This document shows, one piece after another, positions 13,127 through 63,689 of a stretch of DNA of 64,000 nt. The position numbers were made by a program, and so were the translations under genes. Each line of letters begins with the position of its first letter. The first letter of the stretch is position 1. Under the pieces are notes generated by a model. That model was not told the DNA's origin and did not search any database. It saw nothing but the letters and a program-made list of their open reading frames with translations. The stretch spans positions 140,795 through 204,794 of IMG/VR virus record IMGVR_UViG_3300008448_000001; one strand, written 5' to 3'.

Positions 13127-14773
13127 ATGACTCACCCACGCGGCAGGCAGGCCATAGGCTTAAATCAGCCGCCAAACAGCGGTAACCTATATCCTTTCGT
13201 TAATCCTTCGTCGGACATACAGCAGCTTTTTTCCGACTTCTTTGTGTCTTTCGAAAACAGCTCGGGATCTGTCAAGTACCCGCTCAAGGTAGCCTGGCTT
13301 TACGGCTTCGGTTCCAACAGTGTTTCGCCTTTCCCTGGAAGACCTACGCCGTCGCACGCTTACGACCTGATCGTGGAAGATGCGAACGGGGAGATTGTCT
13401 TTGACTCGACCGAGGCTTCCGTTTACAAAGTAGTCGACTGGGATTCTCGTCTGCGGGTCATCGAGTGGGAAAGCAACATGGCTGTTTGTCGTTGCGTGAT
13501 TCACACGCAGTGGACGCAGGAAGATGTCACAGACGGCTTAGCAATCACGTACGACGACAACATAGAACCGGAAAACGGGGAGCTTTACGCCGAGTGTGGC
13601 TATGAATTGCCGCGTCGCGTGAAATCCATCCAAATCGGAAACGAGATAGTCACAGCAAAAGCCTTGACCCTGCAAAGCGGCTACAACTTCGCCATGGAAA
13701 CCGTCTTGCCGATTGAAGTCGAGTCACCGGCTATCGATCTTTTCGGAGAGGTCGGACTTATTGAAGGGAGTCGCAGGGCTACAAAGATCCAGCTCAGCGC
13801 GGAGCCGGGATCGGGGCTTGGAGTTTTCCCTGGCTGCGTGGACACTGCGACTGTCCTGCGTACCTTGAACAAAGTAAGGTCGGACAGCCACAACAACTTT
13901 ACGTTGGACAGCGAAGGTTGCATTCGGCAGCATCGACCATTGTCCCTATCGTCTACAACCCCTAGGGTTTTCAGCTACTCGGCAAGTGCGATGTCGACCT
14001 CGCAGGCTGCGGCCACTATAAAGCTCAGCAACGACTGTCGCAACTGCTGCGACTGCGAGTACTACGCAAGAACCTACCAAGGTTTGAAGCGGCAATGGTC
14101 GCTGTACAAAGACATAGCGCACACCGCCGAAGAGGCAAGAGATTTTTACCGCGACAACAAAGACCGGTGGCTTGTCGAAAAAGCTATGCGGGAAAAGGAC
14201 TTCATTCGCGTCAGCGTGGCAACCGATGCGGATTGCAAGGTGCGGTGGGGCGTGGCGGTATGTAATCCGACAAACTGCTGTCTGATCAATTTGAAAATAC
14301 AAGTATTTTTTCTGCCTTACGTCTTTGGCGGCTTGTCTTATGGCGTCAACGCTTTTCACTGCCCTGACACCTACCTGGAAGGCTCTTCGACGTGCCAAGT
14401 GCCTGTGGCAGTGTCGCCAGAGATATTGGACTCCGAGAATCACGTGCACTTGTACACTGTAGATTACGCCGACCCTCAGTCCATGACGCTTCTCTATGGA
14501 AAACAATGCTTACCGAGCTGTTACGACGAACCGGGAAACACCAGTGTGGCAATAGCCGTGGTAGCTTACTGGGAAAACCAAGCGCCGGTCGGCAGCCAAT
14601 GCAAACCGGTGACTAATATTGCAACGGACCTCGTGGGTGATATAGTTTCATTCTGCGGTCTTGCTTCAATTCCGGTTCCCACGGAAGTTTACGGGCAGGC
14701 TTTGTCGCAGAAGCGAGAAATGCTCGGAAGCACCAGTAGCTGCTTGTCCTGTAACTGTCAGCCAGAGATATAG
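13127..14773 (+). CDS. Cys-rich tail structural protein (paralog family 2/5)
   Basis: NSGNLYPF; LRTLNKVRSDSHNNF; CRNCCDC; start moved to ATG 13127. Confidence 0.65.
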   Translation: MTHPRGRQAIGLNQPPNSGNLYPFVNPSSDIQQLFSDFFVSFENSSGSVKYPLKVAWLYGFGSNSVSPFPGRPTPSHAYDLIVEDANGEIVFDSTEASVYKVVDWDSRLRVIEWESNMAVCRCVIHTQWTQEDVTDGLAITYDDNIEPENGELYAECGYELPRRVKSIQIGNEIVTAKALTLQSGYNFAMETVLPIEVESPAIDLFGEVGLIEGSRRATKIQLSAEPGSGLGVFPGCVDTATVLRTLNKVRSDSHNNFTLDSEGCIRQHRPLSLSSTTPRVFSYSASAMSTSQAAATIKLSNDCRNCCDCEYYARTYQGLKRQWSLYKDIAHTAEEARDFYRDNKDRWLVEKAMREKDFIRVSVATDADCKVRWGVAVCNPTNCCLINLKIQVFFLPYVFGGLSYGVNAFHCPDTYLEGSSTCQVPVAVSPEILDSENHVHLYTVDYADPQSMTLLYGKQCLPSCYDEPGNTSVAIAVVAYWENQAPVGSQCKPVTNIATDLVGDIVSFCGLASIPVPTEVYGQALSQKREMLGSTSSCLSCNCQPEI

Positions 14774-14775
14774 GC

Positions 14776-16464
14776 GTGATACGAAACAACCATTGGTACA
14801 ACCTCAACGAGCAAAACGCCTACCCTGTCGACGACACGGCTTCGTGCCTGTCGAACGCCGGTTTAAGACTGCCCTCGGCTATCGTTGCAGACTTGCAGCT
14901 ACGTTGGCCACGTGAGCTCGGTAAATACGCTTTTATAAGTGCTGTCACGTGCGGCGAAGAGATAGTCACGCTGCTGATTGAAACCGCGGAGCAGCTTGAC
15001 AACTCCGGCGGGCAAAGCAGGTTAATTGCCGGGATATCGCTTGGACGATCCGAGCTCACGGCTTACCGCACCTACAAACTGGATGCATTCGAGAAAGGTG
15101 TTGCAGGTTTTATTGCTTTCGGTGCTGGCACTTCGGAGCTTTTCCGTGGCGTCTTCAGCTCTCCGTTGCAGTCCCTGCTGACCGCAAGAGCCGCTCGTCC
15201 GATCCGCAAGCCACCTGTCGAAACGCTTGGAATAGCAAACGTTGAAAGCGTTTTGGCCGGTGTTGTCCGTCTGGCCACCGAGCAGCCGCTGGAAATCGTA
15301 CGCGAACCTCGAATAATCAACGGCGTTGCATACGATAACGTTATTGTTTTTCGGCTGCGAGAACCTCCGTCCGACACAACCGTCCAAAACGTACAGTCTG
15401 TTTTTTCGCAGTTCGCCGGACCTTGTGGACGCCGTGTCGGCTCAAGGTCTTGCGTCGACCCGCAACCTATCGAAACGATAAATGGGCTTGCTCCGGATTG
15501 CGATGGAATTTTCACCTTGGATTTCCAAGGATGTGCCGTCGTGGGTAAGAACACTGCGGACTGCGGCGTAGTCGTAGATTGTCAACGCGGTTTGTCCGAT
15601 ACGTGTGCGCCTCCATTTTTGCCTGACCTGGCAACAGGTAAGCTGCCGTCTGAAGTGCCACCGGTTATTATTCCTCCACCGCAGCCTCCCGAGCCGCCGG
15701 TACCTCCGGATACTAGCATTAGCGACTCCATGAGCACCTTGCTGTCGCTGCCTTACTGCGATACGTTTGATGACGGTTTCGCTTACAGCTTCTCGCCTAT
15801 GGATTCGTCCACTTGGGGCATGAGCAACGATGACAGCCCGGGCGAGGCCTACTGCTGCGTTGGACCGCCGCCCAACTTCACCGCTTACGGCTGCGACTCG
15901 TCGTTAAGCGCGAGTCAGTCTTTCTCGGTCGGCCTTTCGTCTTACAGCTACGGCACAGCCAATCTTCCAAGCCTGTCGAAAACGAATCTGTCGCTTTTCA
16001 CGTTAGACGTGCAGTCGCTGTATCGGCGTTACACGACGGACTTCAAAGTGATTGCTTTGAACCCGACAGGTCAGCTCAATGCAGGTATTGTCGTCAATTA
16101 CAGGATAAACAGCGCGGACTTGCACACATACGTCTTCGCAGCCTTGGACGTGACTAACAAAACGTTCGGAGTGTACTTCTTCAACGGAATCAACGCCGTT
16201 CCGCTGTCGACCGTTGCCGTTCCTTTGGCTTCCGTCGACGAATGGTACCGCTTGGAATTTACAGTCGTCCCGAATGAATTAACGCGTACGAGCGTCAACC
16301 TGCAAGCCGTACTCAAAGGGGTTGTAAACCCGGCAATTGACGTTGCTATTGCTACCAGTTTGTCCGGTACGCTCTGGGAACAAGACGCCGGAAATGCAGG
16401 GTTTTACACGCGACGTTCCGCAAGCTATTTCTCCTACTGGCGAGTTGACGAGGCTATTCCGTGA
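14776..16464 (+). CDS. tail structural protein with Pro-rich linker and C-terminal beta-sandwich (paralog 3/5)
   Basis: NEQNAYPV; IETINGLAPDCDGIF; PPPQPPEPPVPP linker; ConA/LamG-like tail. Confidence 0.65.
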   Translation: MIRNNHWYNLNEQNAYPVDDTASCLSNAGLRLPSAIVADLQLRWPRELGKYAFISAVTCGEEIVTLLIETAEQLDNSGGQSRLIAGISLGRSELTAYRTYKLDAFEKGVAGFIAFGAGTSELFRGVFSSPLQSLLTARAARPIRKPPVETLGIANVESVLAGVVRLATEQPLEIVREPRIINGVAYDNVIVFRLREPPSDTTVQNVQSVFSQFAGPCGRRVGSRSCVDPQPIETINGLAPDCDGIFTLDFQGCAVVGKNTADCGVVVDCQRGLSDTCAPPFLPDLATGKLPSEVPPVIIPPPQPPEPPVPPDTSISDSMSTLLSLPYCDTFDDGFAYSFSPMDSSTWGMSNDDSPGEAYCCVGPPPNFTAYGCDSSLSASQSFSVGLSSYSYGTANLPSLSKTNLSLFTLDVQSLYRRYTTDFKVIALNPTGQLNAGIVVNYRINSADLHTYVFAALDVTNKTFGVYFFNGINAVPLSTVAVPLASVDEWYRLEFTVVPNELTRTSVNLQAVLKGVVNPAIDVAIATSLSGTLWEQDAGNAGFYTRRSASYFSYWRVDEAIP

Positions 16465-17264
16465 CAGACATTCGGCACGCAGAACTAATTCGTTCGCTGA
16501 GAGAAACCAAGTACCCGTTTGTACCGACCGCGAGTTTGAGCAACGGGAGTGTGTTTTTCGTCGAAGATACCTTCTTGGACGCCCACATTTACGCCGTCGA
16601 GGGGTCGGGGCGTTATTACGTTTCGCAAGTTATCGTGCAGTCGGATAAGTTCGTGCTGTACGTTGGCGACACAGCTTTTCCGTTGCGTTTGAAGGGTGAG
16701 GTTAATCTCCCCATTTCAACGGGTTCTATCCGCCTCACGGACGAGCACGGGAGACCGGCGGGTTTGCTAGTCTCAACTCCCGACAGACTGGCTTTGATCT
16801 CCGCCTGGGGGATTCGAACGCACGTCTTTGAGCAGGGTCAAACGGAGTTTTGTGTTACGTGTCAGGTTCCAGCGGCTTACCCGGGCGTCACGGGCATGCA
16901 AACGCCTGACGGGCAGCTTTCAACGGGCAAAGTTTGGCTTGTGGGTGAAGACGGTGTGGTTCTCCGCACGGATAGCTACATCAACAAACAAGGTGAAGAC
17001 GTTCCGGTGGTTCGCGTCGACGTCGTAGGTGATCCTTTGAACTTGCAGAGGTTGTGCAACCCGGCAGACTTGTTCGTTCCAGTTAACCCGATACGTGTCA
17101 TACGTGTCGTTAACGGCGATTACACCTACGATTGCTACCCGGACGAACAAGGCAACTTCAACATTCAGATGAACGATGATTTGGCCCCGGATCCTGCGTT
17201 AAGAATCCGCACTACTGCCGCAGGCATAGTCTTTTCCGTAGAAGGCTCGGTGATCAACAAATAA
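16461..17264 (+). CDS. tail structural protein (paralog 4/5)
   Basis: LRETKYPF; YPDEQGNFNI. Confidence 0.65.
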   Translation: MTDIRHAELIRSLRETKYPFVPTASLSNGSVFFVEDTFLDAHIYAVEGSGRYYVSQVIVQSDKFVLYVGDTAFPLRLKGEVNLPISTGSIRLTDEHGRPAGLLVSTPDRLALISAWGIRTHVFEQGQTEFCVTCQVPAAYPGVTGMQTPDGQLSTGKVWLVGEDGVVLRTDSYINKQGEDVPVVRVDVVGDPLNLQRLCNPADLFVPVNPIRVIRVVNGDYTYDCYPDEQGNFNIQMNDDLAPDPALRIRTTAAGIVFSVEGSVINK

Positions 17265-17265
17265 A

Positions 17266-18300
17266 ATGCCACGTCCTAACTTTTTCAACGACAACCTGAA
17301 CCGCGTCTATCCTTTCAAAGAAGGAAGCTCGGGCGTTAATACGCCTGACTCCGGGCTTTTCGATTTTTACGCTTTGCCGGACAACGTGATAGTTGATTTT
17401 GGCGTTATCATGGGCCCCGAGTCCGGCTTTGACGCCGAGATCGACGAAGTCTTCTTGTATCGCATCACGCGAGTAAACGCATCGGTATTCGAGTTTGAAT
17501 TCCGCTGCACTGCTAGCAATTTGATGCATGCACCACTTATCTTTACCCGTTCGACCACCGCGGAACTATTCGAGACGGAGTTTGTCGAAAGCTTCACGCT
17601 TGACGAGGCGGCAATAAGCCTTTCAATGTCCGGCCAATTACCTGTGTCGACTTCCGACTCCGGTGTCGCGGAAGAATGCGGAGAGCCCCTTTGGTCCGGA
17701 TTCATGGTCTCGGGCGACATGCAAAGCCTAGCTGCCCGAATACCAGCAGGCACAAGCCTTACCCGCGAAGACGTCTACTCGGCAATCATTGAACCGTGCC
17801 TGATACAGAACTTGTACCTAAACCAAGTCGTGTCCGTTAACATCGCGAATTCAGACAGGACGCGAGCTCTTCGCCCGGAGACTTGCCCGCAGAACCAGTG
17901 GGACTTTGACGTCGGTCAGACTTACGTGTACGAAACGTGCTTGACCGGCAATATCAAGTTTAAAGCCGGTTTCAACATGTCTATAAGCCAAGACGTTGCC
18001 AGCTCTACACTGGTTTTTGCGCCTACGCTCGGTGCGGGAGACGGTCAGCCTTGCGAGGAGATCGCAATCTTCCCTGGAGAAACTCCACCCGTTGGGTCCG
18101 ATAACGGCTTGCTTGCAGGTGACTTTTATTGCAATGAAGCCTTGCGTTCGATTAACGGTTTGCAGGGACCGACTTTGACGTTCTTCGGGGAGTCGGGTGT
18201 TTCTATAATAACGGACGTTGTAAACAAAAAATTAGTCATAGACATCAACTTAGCGGATTTGGCTGTCTGCGATTTTTCATTCAACTCCGTATCACTATAA
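17266..18300 (+). CDS. tail structural protein (paralog 5/5)
   Basis: NLNRVYPF; LRSINGLQG. Confidence 0.65.
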   Translation: MPRPNFFNDNLNRVYPFKEGSSGVNTPDSGLFDFYALPDNVIVDFGVIMGPESGFDAEIDEVFLYRITRVNASVFEFEFRCTASNLMHAPLIFTRSTTAELFETEFVESFTLDEAAISLSMSGQLPVSTSDSGVAEECGEPLWSGFMVSGDMQSLAARIPAGTSLTREDVYSAIIEPCLIQNLYLNQVVSVNIANSDRTRALRPETCPQNQWDFDVGQTYVYETCLTGNIKFKAGFNMSISQDVASSTLVFAPTLGAGDGQPCEEIAIFPGETPPVGSDNGLLAGDFYCNEALRSINGLQGPTLTFFGESGVSIITDVVNKKLVIDINLADLAVCDFSFNSVSL

Positions 18301-29440: not shown

Positions 29441-29514
29441 GTGACCGTAGCTCAATAGGTTAGAGCAGGAGACTCATAATCTCTCGGTTCCCGGTTCAAG
29501 TCCGGGCGGTCACA
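29441..29514 (+). tRNA. tRNA with CAT anticodon (Ile2/lysidine-type more likely than Met)
   Basis: Cloverleaf GTGACCG/CGGTCAC, D arm GCTC/GAGC, anticodon arm GGAGA-CTCATAA-TCTCT, T arm CCCGG-TTCAAGT-CCGGG; CCA not encoded. Confidence 0.92.
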
Positions 29515-29577
29515 CTGCTGACAACTGCTACGTAGCAGCTGTTACCTTGTTTGTTAGACCCTTTCACAGGAGTTGAT

Positions 29578-45156: not shown

Positions 45157-47124
45157 CTAGTACCAGTCCATGTCGCGAACACCCTGTGTCGAAGCTACCA
45201 CGTCCTCGCTTAGTGTTATGTCCTTGTAGGCAGAAAGGTCCGGAAATCTTCCGGCCATTTGGAACAGCATCATGGAACCCATCGTGACGGCTTGCGCGAA
45301 ATCGTCGGGACCGGCAGGGTCTCGCAGAATCTTATAAGTGTCACGACCGGAAGCCGACTCGCTTTTGTCTTCTATGAGGTTCAAAAAGTCGTGAAGCAAT
45401 CCGACGTCGTCCGAACCACGGTAATCGTATTCAAAGAACCGCAACACCCCGCTTTTCACGAACTGGCAGCAGTAGTTTAACGCTCTGTTACGGTCCATCG
45501 CATAATGCGCACGCGGATGCTTTCCGGTTGCAGGCTTGAAAATGATCAAACCACCCTTAGCCGGGCCAGTGTATGCCACGGGCAAAATACGATCACGGGG
45601 TAACCCTTCTTGGACAAGCAGTGTCTCGCGGACGGTACCTGCCCCAGTGTAATCGTGCACGACGTGCGAGCAGCGGAAGGCCGACATGATGTTCAGGATC
45701 AAGCGAGCCTCCCTCTCGTGTTCGTGCGGATGCAAGCTGCGGTAACCGTAGATAATGTCAACCCGCCCGTCCGGGCAAAGTCCGCACACGGCTATCGAGG
45801 TGTAAGACTGCAGAGCAAGGTCGCTCTTACCGTTGCTTACGCCGCCTCCGCCCCAGTCGACCGAAACAAAACGATACAGGTAGCTGTCGATGTTCGTCTT
45901 CGCCGTTTCAAGTGAGTTTCTCCAAGGTAAGCAGGCGGCACGCTTGAGGTCTGTGATGGTGACAAGTTTACTGCCACTGTCCCACGACTCGCCGCACACC
46001 TCGTTGTAAAAAACGTGAATCGGCGTGTTTCCTTTACCGTCCCGCTTGTCGACCAGCGTTTGCCACTTTTCGCGGTTCGCGTAGTGCATAGGCATGATGA
46101 TCTGCGGCACGTGGTAGCCTGCAAAACTCCAGCGTTTGTCACCGTAGCGATGCAACCATCGACCCGTTCCACCTTGATAGGCAGGCCTAGGATTTATAGG
46201 TTTTGTGCACTTAGCACAGCTGACTCCCGGAGCCGTTTCGCTGATATCATCCCGGACGGGCCCTATCATTTTGAGTAAGTCATACTCGAGCGAAGGTATG
46301 TTCCAGTGGCCGCAACCTCCGTGCGGACACTTTATAATCCACTCGGCCATGGAGCTATCGATCCAAAGTCTTTCGATCGTGTTGTCAAGCGTCTTTGGAG
46401 TTCCCGCGTACTGCTTGATACCCCAGCTACGCGAAGCCGAAATGGTTTCGTGGATGATCGGTAAAAACGAAATATCCATGTCCTGGATTTCATCGATACA
46501 ATTCTTGTCGGCGGAGATACCACGTGTTCTTTCCGCGTCGAGGTACGCGAAAGAGAAAAGCATTTGCGACCGGTTTTTAAACGATCGTTGCAGCACGTTG
46601 TTCACCGTTTTCTCATCGGTGAACAACTTGCCGACGGGGCTGGTTTCAATGAAAGGGGCGACGTAGTTCTGCGAAAAACGCCGAATCATTTCGAACAACG
46701 GCGTAAGGAAAAGCGTGCTAAAATACGGAATACAGTTTGAGAAGAGGACGCCTTGTGCTGCCAGCGACGTGCTTTTAGACACTTGTCGCCCGGTCTTCAG
46801 CAGCGTTGTCCTTGCCATTCTAGTCCTAAAGAAAGGAGCGAAAGGAAAGTGATCGTGTAAATGATAAGGCTTGCCACGGATGGAAAGCAGCAGCGGCAGC
46901 AACGGCTGAAGCGTCGGATAACCTGACGACCTGAGCATAAAAGCTGCCAAGTGAAGTCTACGATCCAGCTGGTTTTTTAACGCTGGCGATTTGTAGCCCA
47001 TTTCCTGGGCGACAGCGGTCAGCCTGTTTTCGCTGATTATGTACGGGTCGTGTGCCTGTTCTTCCGCCAAAACCTGGCTGGAAGTTTTTCTGGCGTTTTT
47101 GATTTGATCGTAGGAGGATGTCAT
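45157..47124 (-). CDS. terL: terminase large subunit (gpA-like)
   Basis: LKTGRQVSKST Walker A, NCIDEIQD Walker B, AGTPKT, CPHGGC/CAKC zinc finger, VSVDWG nuclease Asp, GPDDFAQA; start uncertain (frame open to 47352). Confidence 0.9.
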   Translation of the reverse strand: MTSSYDQIKNARKTSSQVLAEEQAHDPYIISENRLTAVAQEMGYKSPALKNQLDRRLHLAAFMLRSSGYPTLQPLLPLLLSIRGKPYHLHDHFPFAPFFRTRMARTTLLKTGRQVSKSTSLAAQGVLFSNCIPYFSTLFLTPLFEMIRRFSQNYVAPFIETSPVGKLFTDEKTVNNVLQRSFKNRSQMLFSFAYLDAERTRGISADKNCIDEIQDMDISFLPIIHETISASRSWGIKQYAGTPKTLDNTIERLWIDSSMAEWIIKCPHGGCGHWNIPSLEYDLLKMIGPVRDDISETAPGVSCAKCTKPINPRPAYQGGTGRWLHRYGDKRWSFAGYHVPQIIMPMHYANREKWQTLVDKRDGKGNTPIHVFYNEVCGESWDSGSKLVTITDLKRAACLPWRNSLETAKTNIDSYLYRFVSVDWGGGGVSNGKSDLALQSYTSIAVCGLCPDGRVDIIYGYRSLHPHEHEREARLILNIMSAFRCSHVVHDYTGAGTVRETLLVQEGLPRDRILPVAYTGPAKGGLIIFKPATGKHPRAHYAMDRNRALNYCCQFVKSGVLRFFEYDYRGSDDVGLLHDFLNLIEDKSESASGRDTYKILRDPAGPDDFAQAVTMGSMMLFQMAGRFPDLSAYKDITLSEDVVASTQGVRDMDWY

Positions 47125-47125
47125 C

Positions 47126-47290
47126 TTGAAGTTAAGCGATACTGTGTTTGACTTACTGTCTCTCACAGCCAAGAGTATAATCGGAGTAGCGGCCCTAACC
47201 GCCAAGTTGGTGATTCTCATTGGCGGCGGCTTATTAGCTGTCGTGATGGGAATCAATGATATGGTTTTCAGTTCGACGGACAAAGAGTAA
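47126..47290 (+). CDS. small membrane protein (54 aa, not in ORF track)
   Basis: AGGAGG RBS before TTG; hydrophobic IIGVAALTAKLVILIGGGLLAVVMGI. Confidence 0.5.
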   Translation: MKLSDTVFDLLSLTAKSIIGVAALTAKLVILIGGGLLAVVMGINDMVFSSTDKE

Positions 47291-47530
47291 CTAGCAGCGG
47301 GGGAGGCCACATGCCTACCAGAAGTTCTTTCGCCTACAGCCGGAGAAAACAATTGCGACCGCTAAATTGGCCGTCGTCTAGATTGGCTCCAAAACAGTTG
47401 CTGATCAATCAAACCGAGGTCCCGAGCGGTAAACCCTTGGAGGAATTGATAGCAGGCGAAGGGGCGCCCCCCTCTGATCGAGTTAGCCTAAACAGTTGGT
47501 CTCCTCCGATCCCTTCGGAGGAAGATGGTA

Positions 47531-50882: not shown

Positions 50883-51434
50883 ATGCTGACGATCAAAGAA
50901 TTTTGCACTGCGAGACATGCTTGCCACGCAGGCCGCGAATGGGCCTTAGCGAATTGCACAGACATGCAGGATGTTTGGAACAAGCTACAGCCCGAATGGT
51001 TAATTTGGGTTGCTTTGCGACACGGTGTTTTAAGCGAAAAGGAGCTGCGGCTTTTTGCAGTCCATTGCGTAAGATCACTTGAACAGTTCTTAACCGATCC
51101 TCGGATCAACGAGTGCGTCAACGTTGCTGAAAAATTCGCCAACGGCGAAGCTTCGGTAACTGACCTAGAGCTAGTCAGGGAGGCAGCCGCGACAATGTTT
51201 AAAACGTTTGACGTTTACTCGACTTTTACCGCCAACTGGGGAAGGGCGGCGAACAAATTGGCCTACCTTTTGACTGGAAAACTTTTAATGCCGTTTAGCC
51301 TTGCGTCTCACGCGGCATATGCGTCTTTGGCTATCGCACGCACTTGGTATCTCGATCCGGAGAAGCCAGCCGCAATGCAGCTGGCCCAGGCTAAGTGGCT
51401 CCGCGAAAACACAAAACCTAACTTTGAGGCGTGA
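50883..51434 (+). CDS. helical protein, paralog family LRLFAV.CA (copy 1)
   Basis: ACHAGREWA, KELRLFAVHC, QAKWLRENTKPNFE. Confidence 0.75.
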   Translation: MLTIKEFCTARHACHAGREWALANCTDMQDVWNKLQPEWLIWVALRHGVLSEKELRLFAVHCVRSLEQFLTDPRINECVNVAEKFANGEASVTDLELVREAAATMFKTFDVYSTFTANWGRAANKLAYLLTGKLLMPFSLASHAAYASLAIARTWYLDPEKPAAMQLAQAKWLRENTKPNFEA

Positions 51435-51436
51435 TC

Positions 51437-52000
51437 ATGATTTTAACCGGAAGTGCGATTCAAAACGCGATTGAAAACGGCGATATCGATATAACACCGT
51501 ACCGCAAGGAGCAGCTTGGACCGAACTCGTACGATCTTCGGTTGAGCAAATTCATTGCTACAAGCATTAGCCCCTCGCTTGACGCGAAGAAGAAACCTGT
51601 TTTCGAAACCGAAATAATCCCGGTAGAGGGTTACCTGCTTCTACCGGGCCAGCTTTACCTCATGGCTACGCAGGAAGTAACACAAACTTCCAAGTACGTT
51701 CCATGTATCGAAGGTCGCTCTTCGATAGGTCGTCTCGGAATTAATGTGCACGCCACCGCGGGTTTCGGCGACATTGGCTTTCATGGCACGTGGACGTTGG
51801 AGGTCTCTTGCGTGATCCCTGTCCGAATTTACTCCGGAATGCGAATATGTCAAATTTACTTTTTTGAACCGCGTTTTCACGGTACAGCGCCAAGCCTTTA
51901 CAATGGAAAATACTTTGCGCAAGGCCTACCCCGCACAAGCGATGTATACCTTGAACAAGACGAGTGGCACACCGGCGGATCCGCGAATACTGGAGGTTAA
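51437..52000 (+). CDS. dcd: dCTP deaminase
   Basis: GPNSYDLRL, IEGRSSIGRLGI, TAGFGDIGFHGTWTLE, RICQIYF, YNGKY. Confidence 0.92.
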   Translation: MILTGSAIQNAIENGDIDITPYRKEQLGPNSYDLRLSKFIATSISPSLDAKKKPVFETEIIPVEGYLLLPGQLYLMATQEVTQTSKYVPCIEGRSSIGRLGINVHATAGFGDIGFHGTWTLEVSCVIPVRIYSGMRICQIYFFEPRFHGTAPSLYNGKYFAQGLPRTSDVYLEQDEWHTGGSANTGG

Positions 52001-56780: not shown

Positions 56781-57335
56781 ATGAAACCTGAAGAACTAAA
56801 AGCAATCCTGGACGATCACGATAAGTGGTTGCGTAACGAGGGCGGCAAAAGGGCCTGCCTTGCCGGGGCCAACCTAAGCCGGGCCAACCTTGTCGGGGCC
56901 GACCTTCGCAGGGCCAACCTTGAATGGGCCAACCTTAGCGGGGCCGACCTTCGCGGGGCCAACCTTAGCCGGGCCAACCTTGAAGGGGCCAACCTTAGCG
57001 GGGCCAACCTTTGCGGGGCCAACCTTGAAGAGGCCAACCTTAGCGGGGCCAACCTTGGCGGCGCTGACCTTGACGAGGCTAATCTTATTGAGGCCGAAAT
57101 CGACGCTTCGATTTGCCGTATGGATTTTGGCGGATGGTCGATTTGCGTTTACGCAGACCGAACAGCTATCGGCTGCCAGCAGCGCATTAACGAGGACTGG
57201 TTAGCGTGGACGCCTGAAAGCGAAGAGATCAAGAAGATGCACGGCGATGCGTCTTCTTGGTGGGCTACGCACGGCGAAGCGGTTAAAGCGGTCATTAAGT
57301 GCGTGATGGCAAAAGCGAAAGGCGGTGACGCGTGA
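56781..57335 (+). CDS. pentapeptide repeat protein (copy C)
   Basis: [17 protein letters not shown]; ANL repeats; 78 nt identical to copy B. Confidence 0.9.
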
Positions 57336-59397: not shown

Positions 59398-59694
59398 ATG
59401 AAACACGAAAAAATTATACGACGCGACGACGGAAGTCGCGTCAAGATAGAAGTGCTCTTAAGTTTAGGTGTTTATTCCGACGCAGTGGAATGGCGTTTTG
59501 CAACTTACAAGTGCGAAAAGGGCAAGAGAACGTGGCAAACTGCCATTGATCCGTTTGCGTACGAGCTACGCGGTCTCGCGGATAGGGACAAAAAGGCTCG
59601 CGAACGTCACTTGAAATTACAGCTGGCAACCGAAGAAGAAGTTGAAGCTGTGATGCTCGAGCTTTTAGCCAAAATCAAACCAGTAGTAAGTTAG
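59398..59694 (+). CDS. hypothetical protein
   Basis: RBS AGGA before ATG 59398. Confidence 0.65.
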   Translation: MKHEKIIRRDDGSRVKIEVLLSLGVYSDAVEWRFATYKCEKGKRTWQTAIDPFAYELRGLADRDKKARERHLKLQLATEEEVEAVMLELLAKIKPVVS

Positions 59695-59702
59695 GAGCAA
59701 AA

Positions 59703-59966
59703 ATGCGTAGGTCTTCCAAAGAAATGTCTGTTGAAGCTTCCACGGCGTTGTTTTTCATCATAGGCGTTGGGCTCATGATAACAGGGTTTAGCCTAGCGGC
59801 TTGGAGTTCTTTTACAAGTTCCAACAAAAAGTGGACAGTCCACGCTGACGGCCAAAGCTTCGAATCGCTCAAGCAAGTCACGCTAACCGGCAATTACGTC
59901 GAATACGCTACACCGGACGGGAAGCGTATCGTTTTCCACGGATCATTTACCGCGGTAGAGCAGTGA
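59703..59966 (+). CDS. membrane protein
   Basis: RBS AGGAG; TM ALFFIIGVGLMITGFSLAAW. Confidence 0.65.
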   Translation: MRRSSKEMSVEASTALFFIIGVGLMITGFSLAAWSSFTSSNKKWTVHADGQSFESLKQVTLTGNYVEYATPDGKRIVFHGSFTAVEQ

Positions 59967-59997
59967 TTGAGTTTCAAAAGGACAACAAGGGACACAC

Positions 59998-60345
59998 ATG
60001 AAAGTAAAAGGCGGGCCTGCTTCCCGTAAAAAGCAATACCAGCAAGTTCAAATCCCGGATGTGCTCGACGAATCTCTGGCCAACACCCAGCTGACGCTGC
60101 GAACGCAGAACACACTGGAGAAGCACGGGATATGTACTATCCGAGATCTGACCGCAAAAACGGTCGCGGACCTGATGAGCATTCCCAACCTGGGGCAAAT
60201 CACGATTCAGACCTTGCGAGCGTTTTTAGACAGCCTCTGCGTTGCGCACAGGTTGAACGAAAGCGACGAGGTTCAAATACAGACCGCCAAGAAGCGATTA
60301 GACGCACAGAAGCGGAAAACCGCCCCTGTGCAGCCCAAGCAGTGA
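59998..60345 (+). CDS. RNA polymerase alpha subunit C-terminal-domain-like protein
   Basis: LTLRTQNTLEKHGICTIRDL...DLMSIPNLGQITIQ matches the alpha-CTD consensus LSVRSxNCLKxxGIxTIGDL...LLKxxNLGxKS. Confidence 0.85.
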   Translation: MKVKGGPASRKKQYQQVQIPDVLDESLANTQLTLRTQNTLEKHGICTIRDLTAKTVADLMSIPNLGQITIQTLRAFLDSLCVAHRLNESDEVQIQTAKKRLDAQKRKTAPVQPKQ

Positions 60346-60388
60346 AAAACACTTCCAGCGGGCTCCCAGGGGCCTAGAAAGGGATGTT

Positions 60389-60688
60389 ATGAAGGTCAAC
60401 GACGAGGTAAAGCGGATGGTGATTCAATCCCGTAAAAAGGGACGCCAGCCGTCGATGTTCAGACCGGACTACTACGTCAACGATTTAGAGTTCAAGTTTG
60501 AGCGGTGGCTATACAGCCAAGGGTTCCGCCCTGGTGACGAGCACATGCTCGGAAGAACCGTAAAAGTGCCTTCGCTATCGCCGCAGTTGGTAAATCAATA
60601 CGTAGGAAACGTCAGCAACGAGGACTGGCCGCAGATCTGCGTGTTCGCCAGTCGATTAGTAAATCTTCAAAAGCTAGAGCAGAATTAA
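60389..60688 (+). CDS. hypothetical protein
   Basis: RBS AAGGGA; 99 aa. Confidence 0.6.
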   Translation: MKVNDEVKRMVIQSRKKGRQPSMFRPDYYVNDLEFKFERWLYSQGFRPGDEHMLGRTVKVPSLSPQLVNQYVGNVSNEDWPQICVFASRLVNLQKLEQN

Positions 60689-60699
60689 CGCAGCTTTTT

Positions 60700-60999
60700 C
60701 TGCAATGTGCGCTTATCCATATTTTCATTATCCTAACGGATAAATGAAAACGCGATTGTACTCGTATAGGCGTTCTGCTGTGTCGTTCTGTCGTCTAAGC
60801 AGCAGCCGCAGCTTCTGCCATGGTCAATAAAGAACACTACCGCCTGTAAAGCTTATTTTGGGCTAAAGGCAGCTACCCAAAGACGTGTTTCTTACGCCAC
60901 AAGAAAGGATATAAATAATAATAATAATCGGAACTACTCGGTTTTTGGGTTTCTATTATCCGTTAGGATAATGGAAATATGGATAAAAGCACATGGCAG
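60700..60999. repeat. 44-bp inverted repeat flanking a 212-bp spacer (candidate origin or invertible element)
   Basis: 60700-60743 vs 60956-60999, 40/44 complementary; TTATCC motifs; AT-rich (AAT)n tract inside. Confidence 0.85.
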
Positions 61000-61050
61000 G
61001 ATTCGTCCTGCTAATTCTGGGAGGAGGTCAGCATTAAAGCTACTGGAAAG

Positions 61051-61953
61051 TTGCCCGGTTATTGCAAAACAATCAAATACCAACCGTCTAGGTTTTGTTT
61101 ACCTTACAAGCTGCTTTCTTCTTGTGTGCTGCACTTGAATCGAAAGCGAAAAGCTTTTCACCGTGTTCTAATGTTTCAGTACCGTTATCGCTTGCAGCTT
61201 AAGTCTTACGTTGCTGCGTTAAACGTTCGCCGTAAGCGTGCGCAACGAGAAGCCGATGAACTGGGTGTTGAGCCGTCTTCGATTGACTCCACGGATTTCA
61301 AAGGTGAGTTTCTTAAACTGGTGCGGCAGTGCAATTGCCCTGCTCCTGGTTGCAGCTACACGCCTTCGCCGCTGTTTCACTGTGGAAACCCTAAAACTTG
61401 CCCGTTTTGTTTTGTTCGACTGCGATTAATCCCTGTTTATGAGGGTGTTATGTCGCTCGGCGAATCTGTTTTAGCTAATTCGATGCTGATCGGCTGGTCT
61501 CGTAAGTGTTCCTTCGAAGATGGTCTACCGTTCTTTTCCCGTAGAACGGGTCCGCACGGGTGGACGAAAGCCGCTTTTAGTGTGCAAGTTGCAGTGCCTT
61601 TTTACGAACGCAAACTGCTGGCGGAACCCGAGGAGATTCGCGGTCGGATTAAAAGGTTCGAGTACCTTCCGGTGATTTTCCACGTTGGACTGCACGTGGT
61701 TCCGGCGGATGGCAACGGGCTGGATGTCTTCCGTAAAAAGCGTGAGGCGTTAAAACTAACGTCGGTGCCTTACGCTTCGTTGGTTGGTTTGAGTCCGGAA
61801 GAGCGTGAGGCCCGTTTGCGCTCCGTTATGCAACAGCTTTTTGCGTTCCGCTGGGAACCGTTTTTCACTCCGGACGCGAAGCTTGTTTTTCGGACGGTTC
61901 ACGATTGTTTTCGGGATCAGAATTTAATTCGTTTTCAAAAGAGGAAAGACTGA
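61051..61953 (+). CDS. Cys-rich hypothetical protein (zinc-binding; start uncertain)
   Basis: CNCPAPGC, CGNPKTCPFC; TGATG-coupled to the next gene. Confidence 0.6.
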   Translation: MPGYCKTIKYQPSRFCLPYKLLSSCVLHLNRKRKAFHRVLMFQYRYRLQLKSYVAALNVRRKRAQREADELGVEPSSIDSTDFKGEFLKLVRQCNCPAPGCSYTPSPLFHCGNPKTCPFCFVRLRLIPVYEGVMSLGESVLANSMLIGWSRKCSFEDGLPFFSRRTGPHGWTKAAFSVQVAVPFYERKLLAEPEEIRGRIKRFEYLPVIFHVGLHVVPADGNGLDVFRKKREALKLTSVPYASLVGLSPEEREARLRSVMQQLFAFRWEPFFTPDAKLVFRTVHDCFRDQNLIRFQKRKD

Positions 61954-63689
61954 TGTCAGAAAGAAACCGTAAAATTGCTGAGTATTTAAAAGCTATTGCT
62001 CTGCTCATCGAAAGCGATTCCGTGTCGCAGACCTGCGAGCAACCGCTCGTAATACCTGAGGGGTGGCGGGAGTTGTCGCCGGATGAGGTGCCAAGATTGG
62101 GGGATATGGCGGAACAGCTGGGTGCTTGGCGTGCGCGGAAATCTGTTGGCAGTAAGGCCTACGAATTGTACGAAGTTCGCCATATTCGCAAAATCGAAAC
62201 CGCCAACCCTTCGGAAACTCCGAATAGTTTGATTCCCGATCCAGGGCCGGGCTATCGGTTGCTGAGCAAAGAGCCACCGGAACCTGTGCGGGAGGGCGAT
62301 GAATTCTGGCAGAAATTAAAGGGGGAGTGGGTTGAGATTGCAGAATTCGTGCACGAAACCCGTCAGCAAGCTCCGTCATACTACTATCGTCGCAAGATCG
62401 AAACCGCCGAAACCGCCAACCCTTCGGAAACTCCGAACAGCTCGACTTGGATTCCAAAGATCGGCGACAAGGTGTGGGTTTCCATACCGGGGCGGGCTGT
62501 GAGCGGGCTTGAGTGCCTTGTGGAAGGCAAATACAGCGAGGGGTATGTCGTCAGTAGCATTTGCGGTTTCTTTAGGTCGACAGGAATTGAAGCAAAAGAT
62601 CTCCAACTGATCGAGGCCGCGAACCCTTCGGAAACTCCGAACAGTTGGGCGCCAGATCCGGGCGAAGGCTATCGGTTGCTAAGCAAAGATCCTTCGGAGC
62701 AAACGATTAAGGGTGATGACATTTGGGTAACGCTTTCCCAGAAATGGATCGAATCCGATGGCTGGAAAACTGTTGGCGGTCCGCAGTCTGCCGGACGATA
62801 TTACCGGAGAAAGCTTGAGCCTGCCGTGCCTGCCGAGTGGGTTCCGAAGACCGGTGACTGGGTGAAGGTCAACAAGCATGTAGGCAATCCCGGTCGAAGG
62901 AAGTATTGGAACGAGCAGATGGACCTTTACAATCACAAGATTGGTTGTGTTTCCGCAGTCAACGTGGATCGCGGATTCGCGACCATTGCAGGTTTCACGC
63001 GAGAAGGCTACTACCATTGGCAGTTTGATTTCGATTGGCTTGAACCTGCAGAAGCCCCTGCCGACCATATTGCCGACGTCAACAAAATGGTCAATCCTTC
63101 GGAAATCCCGAACAGTTCGGCGCCTACCGAGTGGATTCCCAGGGTGGGCGATAAGGTGCGGGTGATAAAACCGGACAGGCGTGTTACCGGCTTAGCTGGA
63201 GTCATCGTTGAAGATACGAAAGGAGAGTACGCAGTGCGTGTTTTAAACGCAAAGCTTACGTCGTATGAACTTGAGGCAAAAGACCTCCAGCTCATCGAAC
63301 CATCTAACCTTCCGGAAACTCCGGATAGTTCGAAGCCCGATCCTGGCGAAGGCTATCGGTTGCTAAGCAAAGAGCCACCGGAGGATTTACAGCCGGGCGA
63401 CGATTTCCACAGCAAAGGAGAATGGCAGCCGTCAGTGAGAGCTAACGACGACATTGCGGAGCAGGATAAGTGCTACTACCGTCGCAAGATCGAGCCTGCC
63501 CAATGGATTCCCAGGGTGGGCGATAAGGTGCGGGTGGTTGGCGTAGCTGATGTTACTCCCGCAGTCGGGATTGTGCGTTCATTGAATCCAAACACTCGCT
63601 GGGCGTATTTTCATTCTGTTTCTAAGGATGGTGGCTATGCTGACTGGTTTCGATTTGAAGACCTTGAACTCGTCGAGGCCGCAAAATGA
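61953..63689 (+). CDS. modular repeat protein (GYRLL..YYRRK and W.PKVGDKV SH3-like domains joined by NPSETPNS linkers)
   Basis: Alternating repeated domains visible in the translation. Confidence 0.75.
   Translation: MSERNRKIAEYLKAIALLIESDSVSQTCEQPLVIPEGWRELSPDEVPRLGDMAEQLGAWRARKSVGSKAYELYEVRHIRKIETANPSETPNSLIPDPGPGYRLLSKEPPEPVREGDEFWQKLKGEWVEIAEFVHETRQQAPSYYYRRKIETAETANPSETPNSSTWIPKIGDKVWVSIPGRAVSGLECLVEGKYSEGYVVSSICGFFRSTGIEAKDLQLIEAANPSETPNSWAPDPGEGYRLLSKDPSEQTIKGDDIWVTLSQKWIESDGWKTVGGPQSAGRYYRRKLEPAVPAEWVPKTGDWVKVNKHVGNPGRRKYWNEQMDLYNHKIGCVSAVNVDRGFATIAGFTREGYYHWQFDFDWLEPAEAPADHIADVNKMVNPSEIPNSSAPTEWIPRVGDKVRVIKPDRRVTGLAGVIVEDTKGEYAVRVLNAKLTSYELEAKDLQLIEPSNLPETPDSSKPDPGEGYRLLSKEPPEDLQPGDDFHSKGEWQPSVRANDDIAEQDKCYYRRKIEPAQWIPRVGDKVRVVGVADVTPAVGIVRSLNPNTRWAYFHSVSKDGGYADWFRFEDLELVEAAK

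What the first reader, a model, noticed from the sequence alone, without database searches (positions are those of the whole stretch)
60700..60999. 44-bp inverted repeats rich in TTATCC motifs around an AT-rich core: origin or invertible switch
Seen: the arms are 40/44 complementary. Each arm holds TTATCCATA (8/9 match to the DnaA box TTATCCACA) and the internal palindrome TTATCC-TAAC-GGATAA. The spacer contains ATATAAATAATAATAATAAT. The next gene has a C-x5-CPFC cluster reminiscent of replication-initiator zinc fingers. Inference: a symmetric (bidirectional) replication origin with its initiator, or a recombinase-inverted promoter segment or MITE.
Basis: partly seen in the sequence, partly recalled or inferred. 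Interest (0 to 1): 0.65.

Follow-up and report, generated by a model that had tools for sequence, protein, structure and literature searches.

The report
Probable origin beside Rep-like phage gene
The inverted repeat is real and is the only strong one in a 205-kb uncultivated phage genome; it is a conserved, fixed-orientation element at the head of the replication genes, next to a new zinc-ribbon protein shaped like a rolling-circle replication initiator, so it is most likely a replication origin or initiator operator, not a DnaA-box origin, invertible switch or MITE.

Summary
Arms 60700-60743 and 60956-60999 are 40/44 complementary. This is the only inverted repeat scoring 18 or more in the 204,794-bp circularly assembled phage genome.

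Related phage contigs, with neighbouring-protein identity down to about 23%, keep the same layout:
- two inverted arms 190-250 bp apart;
- a palindrome inside each arm;
- an A+T-rich tract beside the gene-proximal arm.

The arms co-vary: 20 of 37 pairs changed on both sides, and no shuffle of 500 did as well. TTATCC itself is not conserved, so these are not DnaA boxes. Palindrome sequences differ between lineages and between arms. They fold better on the strand reading outward from the spacer in 15 of 16 arms (one tie), which suggests single-strand hairpins.

Spacer orientation is the same in every lineage and every metagenome contig. The genome has no serine or tyrosine recombinase, and the element is single-copy. 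This argues against a switch or a MITE.

The downstream gene probably starts at ATT 61033. It founds a family with no Pfam or PHROG match. Its confident model resembles Rep_1 (pC194-type) initiators, but the HUH motif and catalytic Tyr are not conserved.

Best reading: a replication origin and/or operator for this Rep-like protein. This is inferred, not shown.

The parts
59998..60345 (+). Phage gene for an RNA polymerase alpha C-terminal-domain-like protein (115 aa). It is a conserved member of the module.
   Evidence: Pfam PF03118, E 4.8e-11. The same family lies upstream of the element in L015, L017, L022, L024 and the distant L034.
60389..60688 (+). Conserved 99-aa ORF of unknown function. 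It ends 11 nt before the left arm.
   Evidence: No Pfam or PHROG hit. Orthologues of 33-49% identity sit at the same position. AF2 model is only pLDDT 67.
60700..60743 (.). Left arm of the inverted repeat. It contains the outer box (about 60703-60726, with TTATCCATA at 60713-60721).
   Evidence: 40/44 complementary to 60956-60999. The box co-varies with the right box across lineages.
60722..60750 (-). Left local palindrome (TTTTCATTATCC-TAAC-GGATAAATGAAAA). Predicted to form the better hairpin on the minus, outward-reading strand.
   Evidence: The minus strand is more stable in all 7 left arms compared.
60751..60909 (.). Variable part of the spacer. No conserved helix, no iterons, no ORF of 20 aa or more that is conserved.
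   Evidence: RNAalifold finds no shared helix here. No direct repeats. Rfam finds nothing.
60910..60928 (.). A+T-rich tract TATAAATAATAATAATAAT. Candidate DNA-unwinding element and/or -10 region.
   Evidence: (TAA)4 is unique in the genome. TAATAATAATA is kept at the same place in L015, L022 and L017, with an A+T-rich equivalent in L024 and L034.
60929..60949 (+). Conserved motif CGGAA-N6-GGTTTTTGGG between the AT tract and the right hairpin.
   Evidence: CGGAA/CGAAA ... GG(T/C)T(T/G)T is present in window, L013, L015, L016, L017, L022 and L024.
60949..60978 (+). Right local palindrome (GTTTCTATTATCC-GTTA-GGATAATGGAAAT). Forms a 13-bp hairpin with two G.T wobbles on the plus, outward-reading strand.
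   Evidence: -16.7 kcal/mol on the plus strand against -9.4 on the minus. The plus strand is better in 8 of 9 right arms and tied in the ninth (L034).
60956..60999 (.). Right arm of the inverted repeat. It contains the outer box (about 60976-60999, with TATGGATAA at 60978).
61011..61027 (+). Conserved CTAAT (61011-61015) and Shine-Dalgarno GGAGGAGG (61020-61027) in the leader of the Rep-like gene.
   Evidence: TAAT is invariant in alignment A7. Sequence read.
61033..61953 (+). Gene for a 306-aa zinc-ribbon protein with a Rep_1-like fold and a probable ATT start. It is the presumed partner of the element.
   Evidence: Family of 46 representative clusters, with no Pfam, PHROG or PDB sequence hit. 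AF2 pLDDT 95. ESM Atlas best match is a Rep_1 cluster, TM 0.56/0.52 over 232 residues, and language-model features score 0.96. pN/pS 0.21 against L013.

Best explanation
The 350-bp non-coding stretch 60689-61032 is a conserved, single-copy cis-acting DNA element of a lineage of large uncultivated freshwater and marine phages. It is most likely their replication origin, and it may also be the operator and promoter region of the initiator-like gene that follows it.

Anatomy (shown):
- Two inverted modules, each an outer box plus an adjoining palindrome.
- A 190-250-bp spacer between them.
- A+T-rich DNA at the gene-proximal end of the spacer, followed by a conserved CGGAA..GGTTTT motif.

Proposed mechanism (inferred):
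1. The Rep_1-like zinc-ribbon protein encoded immediately downstream recognises the two boxes.
2. The A+T-rich tract melts.
3. The palindromes fold as hairpins on the strand that reads 5'->3' outward on each side. For forks leaving the spacer, these are the lagging-strand templates.
4. The hairpins then serve as loading, priming or recognition signals, much as the inverted hairpin signals ssiA and ssiB do in RSF1010 oriV.

The protein keeps the Rep_1 architecture and its C-x5-CPxC-x2-R zinc motif, but it lacks a conserved HUH pair and a conserved tyrosine. It probably acts as an origin-binding protein rather than a nicking enzyme. The right box sits 30-35 nt ahead of the ribosome-binding site, so binding there could also repress the gene.
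For: 1. The element is real and unique. It is the only strong IR in 204.8 kb, and its boxes occur nowhere else.
2. Its architecture is conserved in the window, L013, L015, L022, L017 and L024. The right halves are present in L016, L018 and L019.
3. An analogous element with unrelated sequence lies in L034/L035, whose Rep-like protein is only about 23% identical. It has 96-nt arms, a 211-nt spacer, two palindromes per arm and an AT-rich stretch by the right arm.
4. The arms co-vary. 88% of cells are paired, 20 of 37 pairs changed on both sides, 0 of 500 shuffles did as well, and slid controls give 35-46%. L015 and L022 differ by CCG>TTC on the left and the mirrored CGG>GAA on the right, which accounts for 6 of their 17 differences.
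5. The palindromes keep their symmetry but not their sequence. They differ between the two arms of L015 and of L017. They are more stable on the outward-reading strand in 15 of 16 arms, with one tie. This points to single-strand hairpins rather than dimer binding sites.
6. The neighbouring protein has a pLDDT-95 model. The only whole-length structural match is a Rep_1 cluster at TM 0.56/0.52; the next best is 0.31. Language-model neighbours are Rep_1 clusters at 0.96, and the Atlas's own model gives TM 0.54-0.55 to Rep_1. It shares the C-x(4-5)-CPxC-x2-R motif with pC194 RepA.
7. Position. The element is the lowest-GC (0.42) of the 25 largest non-coding gaps listed. It lies at the head of a co-oriented block that holds SbcD, SbcC, an SF2 helicase and PolA.
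8. Known analogues. RSF1010 oriV uses two 40-nt inverted hairpin signals on complementary strands (PMC8567376). Rolling-circle Reps act on hairpin-bearing origins next to their genes (PMC5714925).
Against: - There is no experimental or read-level evidence of initiation. Only assembled contigs were available, with no raw reads and no RNA runs.
- Cumulative GC skew shows no switch anywhere in the genome.
- Sequence methods do not link the protein to Rep_1. Pfam finds nothing at E<=1, and hhalign gives probability 2%.
- The HUH motif and the catalytic Tyr are not conserved.
- Three other family members show no such element. L025 and L066 have none within about 2.5 kb, and L033 has none in its 0.5 kb of upstream sequence. 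The 52-kb fragment that holds L025 has none at all.
- No iterons were found in the spacer.
- The element fills the intergenic space just ahead of an operon start, both here and in L034. A purely transcriptional role would explain that equally well.
Confidence: 0.45

Rival explanations
1. Transcriptional control region only. The A+T-rich tract and the conserved CTAAT are promoter elements for the operon that begins with, or contains, the Rep-like gene. The two boxes are operators bound by a phage regulator, either the Rep-like protein itself or the alpha-CTD-like protein. Looping between the boxes across the 200-250-bp spacer would control the operon.
For: - The element always ends 30-35 nt ahead of a gene start: the Rep-like gene here, and a roughly 95-aa ORF ahead of it in L034.
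- CTAAT before the Shine-Dalgarno sequence is conserved.
- Transcription-related proteins are conserved neighbours: alpha-CTD-like and Sigma70_r4 in L066.
- The rare ATT start hints at tight control of expression.
- Autoregulation at origin-linked inverted repeats is common among plasmid initiators (own knowledge).
Against: - No sigma-70-type promoter reaches the scan's threshold in 59900-61400.
- Palindromes that differ in sequence between the two arms of one genome, and that prefer the outward strand, are not what a dimeric repressor operator predicts.
- No gene points leftward, so nothing explains the symmetric left module.
- The box motif is absent from every other intergenic region, so it is not a regulon motif.
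Confidence: 0.25
2. RNA-level element. Read-through or spacer-initiated transcripts fold so that the two arms pair into a 22-45-bp duplex, for example an RNase III processing stem. Alternatively, each outward transcript starts with a hairpin plus box that a protein binds. Either way the RNA would control mRNA processing or translation of the Rep-like gene.
For: - The region folds far better than shuffles on either strand, z -7.2 and -6.8.
- The arms show compensatory changes.
- The hairpins tolerate G.U on the outward strands.
- The right hairpin and box lie in the probable 5' leader.
Against: - No Rfam family matches.
- RNAalifold finds no conserved helix inside the spacer.
- On a single plus-strand RNA, the left hairpins carry A.C mismatches where the minus strand has G.U. 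This holds in 7 of 7 left arms.
- The box sequence (ACACTTAT...) is conserved in both arms, which simple pairing does not require.
- No RNA data exist for this phage.
Confidence: 0.1
3. Invertible promoter segment. A recombinase flips the 212-bp spacer between the inverted arms, as in fimS or Bacteroides invertons.
For: Inverted repeats flank a segment of about 200 bp with an A+T-rich, promoter-like tract just upstream of a gene. In the window the two palindromes share the same asymmetric 4-nt centre.
Against: - The spacer has the same orientation in 6 lineages, in the partial locus L016, and in contigs from 4 runs of 4 studies. No strand-changing joints were seen.
- The whole genome has no Resolvase or Phage_integrase domain, while the control genomes match.
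- In L015 and L017 the inner palindromes of the two arms differ, which leaves no shared crossover core.
Confidence: 0.03
4. MITE or other decayed mobile element, or a packaging (cos/pac) site, or a DnaA-dependent origin built from TTATCC boxes.
For: - Terminal inverted repeats around a short non-coding core resemble a MITE.
- TTATCCATA matches the DnaA box at 8 of 9 positions.
- The phage has a GpA-type (lambda-like) large terminase.
Against: - The element is single-copy in the genome. It sits at the same syntenic site in diverged relatives, with co-varying arms.
- TTATCC is replaced in relatives.
- The terminase gene is 14 kb away on the other strand and has its own flanking gaps.
Confidence: 0.05

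Closest known systems
pC194/pUB110-type rolling-circle replicons (Rep_1, PF01446, with a double-strand origin next to rep)
   Same: - The rep-like gene has a Rep_1-like overall fold and the same C-x(4-5)-CPxC-x2-R zinc motif ahead of the central sheet.
- A hairpin-bearing non-coding element lies immediately upstream of the gene.
   Different: - No Pfam match, and no significant profile-profile match.
- The HUH pair is reduced to H-x-G-x-H/Q, and no tyrosine is conserved.
- The host replicon is a 205-kb dsDNA phage with its own PolA, helicase and SbcCD.
- The element is a symmetric pair of modules rather than a single nick hairpin.
RSF1010/IncQ oriV with the ssiA and ssiB priming signals
   Same: Two inverted signals of about 40 nt lie on complementary strands. 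Each has a hairpin flanked by conserved single-stranded sequence, next to an A+T-rich region (PMC8567376).
   Different: - No RepB'-type primase, RepC iterons or RepA helicase was identified.
- The spacer has no direct repeats.
- The neighbouring protein has no conserved acidic catalytic residues.
- The arms are 200-250 bp apart.
Origins with inverted initiator boxes around an unwinding element, next to the initiator gene (archaeal ORB/cdc6 origins; SV40 and papillomavirus origins, whose origin-binding domains have an HUH-like fold without nuclease activity). This comparison rests on own knowledge.
   Same: - Inverted recognition boxes flank A+T-rich DNA beside the initiator gene.
- The initiator-like protein has a Rep/HUH-type fold and apparently lacks the catalytic residues.
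   Different: - No AAA+ or helicase domain is present in the protein.
- The resemblance is architectural only and was not tested here.
Invertible promoter switches (fimS, Bacteroides invertons, Hin/Gin segments)
   Same: Inverted repeats bracket about 200 bp upstream of a gene.
   Different: - Orientation is fixed in all lineages and contigs.
- No recombinase is encoded in the genome.
- The arms are longer and contain their own palindromes.

Membership tests
Rep_1 (PF01446) HUH rolling-circle initiators (for the neighbouring protein) | Match to the family profile above its curated threshold | tested here: not met
   - No Pfam hit for the protein, or for any of 42 family members, at E<=1.
- PF01446 searched over the six frames of the genome finds nothing at E<=10.
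- hhalign against pC194 RepA and 12 relatives gives probability 2%.
Rep_1 (PF01446) HUH rolling-circle initiators (for the neighbouring protein) | Overall fold and domain order (N-terminal helices, zinc-binding segment, central RRM-like sheet) | tested here: met
   - The ESM Atlas best match is a Rep_1 cluster, TM 0.56/0.52 over 232 residues (15-305); the next match scores 0.31.
- The Atlas's own model gives TM 0.54-0.55 to two Rep_1 clusters. Language-model features score 0.96, and all ten best hits that carry a family fall in Rep_1 or its clan.
- The PDB gives only generic palm/RRM matches with Z below 8, among them SIRV1 ORF119 Rep at Z 6.2.
Rep_1 (PF01446) HUH rolling-circle initiators (for the neighbouring protein) | Motif II: His-hydrophobic-His metal site | tested here: not met
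   The equivalent strand reads H216-V-G-L-H220 here, and H-x-G-x-Q in most of the family. Only H216 is widely kept.
Rep_1 (PF01446) HUH rolling-circle initiators (for the neighbouring protein) | Motif III: catalytic Tyr (YxxK) on a helix | tested here: not met
   - No invariant or nearly invariant Tyr among 42 sequences.
- The C-terminal R-I-x-x-Y-K of many distant members reads R-F-Q-K-R-K here, and that position is F or H in others.
DnaA-box (oriC-type) origin | Clustered DnaA boxes (TTATCCACA-like) kept among relatives | tested here: not met
   The window has an 8/9 match once per arm. Relatives have TTATTTCTA (L022), TTATACATA (L017) and TTATGTATC (L024) at that place, changed in both arms together.
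Invertible DNA switch (inverton) | Both orientations of the segment occur | tested here: not met
   Only one orientation is seen in 6 lineages and in contigs from 4 runs, with no strand-change joints. Contigs can hide rare variants, so raw reads would be stronger.
Invertible DNA switch (inverton) | A site-specific recombinase is available in cis | tested here: not met
   PF00239 and PF00589 find nothing in the 204.8-kb genome. The control genomes match.
MITE / non-autonomous transposon | Multiple copies, or presence/absence polymorphism at orthologous sites | tested here: not met
   Single copy. The element is present at the same syntenic site in all five diverged lineages of the window's group.
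IncQ-type oriV (ssi signals plus iterons) | Two inverted hairpin signals on complementary strands | tested here: met
   Each arm has a hairpin. The outward-reading strand is the more stable one in 15 of 16 arms, with one tie.
IncQ-type oriV (ssi signals plus iterons) | Iterons for the initiator, and a dedicated RepB'-type primase | tested here: not met
   No direct repeats in the spacers. No primase-like catalytic residues are conserved in the neighbouring protein. A primase elsewhere in the genome was not searched for.
Known structured RNA (Rfam) | Match to a curated covariance model, or a conserved internal structure | tested here: not met
   No Rfam match at E<=1 in 59500-62500. RNAalifold finds only the arm pairing.

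The most novel reading that the evidence does not exclude
A previously undescribed type of phage replication origin. A catalytically degenerate descendant of Rep_1/HUH rolling-circle initiators, which keeps the zinc ribbon but has lost HUH and Tyr, has become the origin-binding protein of large dsDNA phages. It recognises a symmetric pair of box-plus-hairpin signals that act as single-strand hairpins on the two outward strands. The phage's RNA polymerase alpha-CTD-like protein may act on the adjoining A+T-rich tract. This would be a bacterial-virus parallel to the HUH-fold origin-binding domains of polyoma- and papillomaviruses.
Probability: 0.3. Interest if true: 0.7.

Novelty: new variant of a known kind. 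Interest (0 to 1): 0.55.

Why it matters
Replication origins and initiators of large uncultivated phages are almost entirely unknown and cannot be found by GC skew. If this reading is right, it would provide:
- a sequence-independent signature for locating origins in this phage group: paired inverted box-plus-hairpin modules around an A+T tract, next to a Rep-like zinc-ribbon gene;
- a new protein family of 46 representative clusters with no existing annotation;
- an example of a rolling-circle initiator fold reused without its nuclease residues.

The module is also compact, about 350 bp plus one 306-aa protein. That makes it easy to test on a plasmid.

Tried and rejected
- Cultured-phage databases: blastn of 60300-62000 and tblastn of the protein both found nothing.
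- Exact scan of IMG/VR for the 16-nt palindrome: only the two close relatives carried both copies. The seven single hits are in the range I estimate for chance, without a formal test.
- Rfam: nothing.
- Sigma-70 promoter scan: nothing. The three terminator-like hits are within the shuffle expectation.
- Foldseek against PDB and BFVD: no match at E<=0.001. Weak rows include microvirus and parvovirus Reps.
- A diverse Rep_1 profile for hhalign could not be built. The word search returned only 99-100% identical pC194 Reps, and the genome scan returned relatives of 78% identity or more, so the profile comparison stayed uninformative.
- Reads: only Logan contigs at 2-5x depth were available. They cross the left arm in 3 runs and the right arm in 1 run, all in the reference orientation. 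Holes after the right arm (60992-61075) in 3 runs prove nothing. No RNA run holds the phage.
- Substitution density between the window and L013 does not separate arms from spacer: 3.7-8.3% everywhere.
- Contigs L016, L018 and L019 all begin at or near the right arm. I read this as assembly breaks at an inverted repeat, not as genome ends.
- The AF2 model of the 99-aa neighbour was too weak (pLDDT 67) to search with.
- A second element was sought in the 52-kb record that holds L025. None was found, but that record is only 23% complete.
- The metagenome-contig scan added only a duplicate of L023.

Full report
**Context.** The window is the last 64 kb of a 204,794-bp virus record (G000:C1:140795-204794). 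The record's ends overlap by exactly 101 bp, so it is a circular assembly and the record's "end" is arbitrary. My crude ORF selection picked 263 ORFs, 223 of them on the plus strand. Cumulative GC skew rises monotonically all round the genome. There is no skew switch at the element or anywhere else, so skew neither supports nor refutes an origin here. The phage turns up in lake and other freshwater metagenomes, and in some labelled as fungus metagenomes. It has no relative among deposited phage genomes.

Arms 60700-60743 and 60956-60999 are 40/44 complementary. Each arm holds TTATCCATA or its complement, and each holds the palindrome TTATCC-N4-GGATAA; both are otherwise absent or nearly absent from the genome. 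The spacer holds TATAAATAATAATAATAAT, whose (TAA)4 run is unique in the genome. The IR scores 32, against at most 12 in 100 shuffles. It is the only IR scoring 18 or more in the whole genome. The 18-nt box occurs only at these two places, even with three mismatches allowed. The element fills a 362-bp non-coding gap. That gap is the fourth largest in the genome and has the lowest GC (0.42) of the 25 largest gaps listed.

**The neighbouring gene.** Homologues show that the downstream gene starts six codons before TTG 61051. The start is ATT 61033, 5 nt after GGAGGAGG. L013 also has ATT, while L015, L022, L017 and L024 have ATG or GTG at the aligned codon, followed by the same K-A residues.
- The 306-aa protein has no Pfam, PHROG or PDB-sequence match.
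- It belongs to a family of 46 representative clusters.
- It is under purifying selection, with pN/pS 0.21 against L013.
- AlphaFold2 with a 42-sequence alignment gives pLDDT 95 and pTM 0.92.
- Foldseek against PDB and BFVD gives nothing at E<=0.001. An exhaustive structural comparison gives only generic palm/RRM-like matches to residues 129-272: GGDEF at Z 7.9, and the Rep proteins SIRV1 ORF119 at Z 6.2 and a vientovirus Rep at Z 5.6.
- The ESM Atlas gives one whole-length match, a cluster that is 100% Rep_1 (PF01446), at TM 0.56/0.52 over 232 residues. The next match scores 0.31.
- The language-model search independently puts Rep_1 clusters first, at 0.96 with 187 shared features. The Atlas's own model matches two more Rep_1 clusters at TM 0.54-0.55.

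**How far the Rep_1 resemblance goes.** pC194 RepA has C-KNRF-CPVC-AW-R just before motif I. The new family has C-x5-CP(W/F)C-x2-R at the equivalent place, and this is the only stretch that hhalign aligns. Profile comparisons are not significant. The HUH position reads H-x-G-x-H/Q, and no tyrosine is conserved. The protein therefore has the architecture of a Rep_1 initiator but fails that family's catalytic criteria. I take it to be a Rep-derived DNA-binding protein. A nicking activity that uses other residues is not excluded.

**Comparative anatomy of the element.** The layout RNA-polymerase-alpha-CTD-like gene, 99-aa gene, element, Rep-like gene recurs in five lineages:
- L013 (Rep-like protein 95% identical);
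- L015 and L022 (about 51%);
- L017 (41%);
- L024 (about 30-35%).

This is shown. Every element has two inverted arms 190-253 bp apart, and each arm is an outer box followed on the inside by a palindrome. The gene-proximal end of the spacer carries an A+T-rich tract, then CGGAA..GGTTTT, and CTAAT lies before the ribosome-binding site. Short contigs L016, L018 and L019 hold the right half.

A far more distant family member, P0013 (about 23% identical, from marine samples), has an analogous element with unrelated sequence at L034:1791-2193. It has 96-nt arms that are 80% complementary, a 211-nt spacer, two palindromes per arm and an AT-rich stretch beside the right arm. An alpha-CTD-like gene again lies upstream, and a roughly 95-aa ORF lies between the element and the Rep-like gene.

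Three other members show no such element. L025 and L066 have none within about 2.5 kb, and L033 has none in the 0.5 kb of upstream sequence its contig holds. The association is therefore recurrent but not universal.

**What the variation says.**
1. The arms co-vary. On the six-sequence alignment, 88% of cells pair, against 35-46% when the partner is slid. 20 of 37 pairs changed on both sides, and no shuffle of 500 did as well. L015 and L022 are 94% identical across the element. Six of their 17 differences are CCG>TTC in the left box mirrored by CGG>GAA in the right box.
2. That same change destroys TTATCC. L017 and L024 have TTATAC and TTATGT there. The DnaA-box reading therefore fails, although a core (ACACTTAT..) is kept in both arms.
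3. The inner palindromes keep their symmetry but not their sequence. In L015 and L017 the left and right palindromes of one genome differ from each other. A dimeric protein site would not behave this way, but a hairpin would.
4. The hairpins have a strand preference. All 7 left arms are more stable on the minus strand. Of the 9 right arms, 8 are more stable on the plus strand and one (L034) is tied. The reason is that mismatches are G.T on the outward-reading strand and A.C on the other. Counting only clearly independent arms (about seven), this is unlikely by chance, at roughly 1 in 100.
5. The spacer has no conserved helix, no iterons and no Rfam match.

**Rejected readings.**
- *Invertible switch.* Spacer orientation is identical in all six lineages and in L016. 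Contigs from four runs of four studies cross the arms only in the reference orientation, without strand-changing joints. The genome encodes no Resolvase or Phage_integrase domain. In L015 and L017 the inner palindromes of the two arms share no crossover core.
- *MITE.* The element is single-copy, syntenic and co-varying.
- *Packaging site.* The GpA-type large terminase lies 14 kb away on the other strand.
- *A single structured plus-strand RNA.* The left hairpins are worse on the plus strand, and nothing in the spacer is structurally conserved.

**Preferred model, and what is inferred.**

*Shown:* a unique, conserved, symmetric box-plus-hairpin pair around an A+T-rich tract. It lies immediately upstream of a Rep_1-like gene and at the head of a co-oriented block. 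Across the arbitrary record junction, that block contains SbcD (genome 4151), SbcC (5346), an SF2 helicase (8815) and a PolA fused to a UDG-like domain (14043-17564). The same SbcD/SbcC neighbours follow in L017.

*Inferred:* the Rep-like protein binds the boxes and the AT tract opens. The palindromes then fold on the outward 5'->3' strands, which are the lagging-strand templates of diverging forks, and serve as loading or priming signals. The closest worked-out parallel is RSF1010 oriV. There, two 40-nt inverted hairpin signals on complementary strands are exposed by unwinding and used by RepB' (PMC8567376). Hairpin-bearing origins beside rep genes are also the rule for HUH initiators (PMC5714925).

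The right box sits just ahead of the gene's leader, and the start codon is ATT, so autoregulation at the same site is likely. The main rival, a purely transcriptional operator and promoter, is thus not exclusive of the origin model. I put the origin reading at about 0.45, operator-only at about 0.25, an RNA-level role at about 0.1, and the remainder together below 0.1.

**Limits.** No raw reads, RNA data or host are available. The Rep_1 link rests on predicted structures and language-model features, not on sequence statistics. The comparative set is small, with five to six independent lineages. No alternative genetic code was used; the ATT start was handled by translating from the second codon.

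Noticed in passing
window 61020-61053: The Rep-like gene appears to start at the rare codon ATT (61033), 5 nt after a strong GGAGGAGG. The close relative L013 also has ATT. More distant homologues have ATG or GTG at the aligned position. This may indicate translational control.
   Followed up: partly
window 59998-60345; L034:630-950; L066:1178-1807: A phage-encoded RNA polymerase alpha C-terminal-domain-like protein (PF03118) is a conserved neighbour of the Rep-like gene, even in the distant marine lineage. Another lineage has a Sigma70_r4 protein nearby instead. Its function is unknown. It might bind the A+T-rich tract.
   Followed up: partly
window 61905-63689: A 594-aa protein carries five or more internal repeats marked by N-P-S-E-T-P-N-S and weak SH3-like hits. 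Metagenome contigs break, diverge and pile up at 62160-62310, which suggests a repeat-driven variable region.
   Followed up: no
window 60875-60884 with 60941-60950: A 10-nt complementary pair could form a stem that encloses the AT-rich tract, just upstream of the right hairpin. Comparable pairs involving the GGTTTT motif occur in L017 and L024, but not clearly in L015 or L034. This may be chance.
   Followed up: partly
G000:C1:14043-17564 (L064): A family A DNA polymerase of 1173 aa has an N-terminal uracil-DNA-glycosylase-superfamily domain and a 3'-5' exonuclease domain. SbcD, SbcC and an SF2 helicase lie upstream of it.
   Followed up: no
window 56781-57335: A pentapeptide-repeat protein (ANLxGANLxx repeats) is encoded among small early-type ORFs.
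   Followed up: no
window 45157-47352 (minus strand); 51431-52000; 29441-29515: A GpA-type (lambda-like) large terminase lies on the minus strand in an otherwise plus-strand genome. A dCTP deaminase and a tRNA-Met are also present.
   Followed up: no
L016:1, L018:1, L019:1: Three independent short metagenome contigs start inside or just beside the right arm or hairpin. This is most simply explained by assembly breaks at an inverted repeat.
   Followed up: partly
G001:C1:51660-51696: The 52-kb viral contig that holds L025 ends in a 17-bp stem with a 3-nt loop, at the very end of the contig. This is most simply an assembly break at a palindrome.
   Followed up: no
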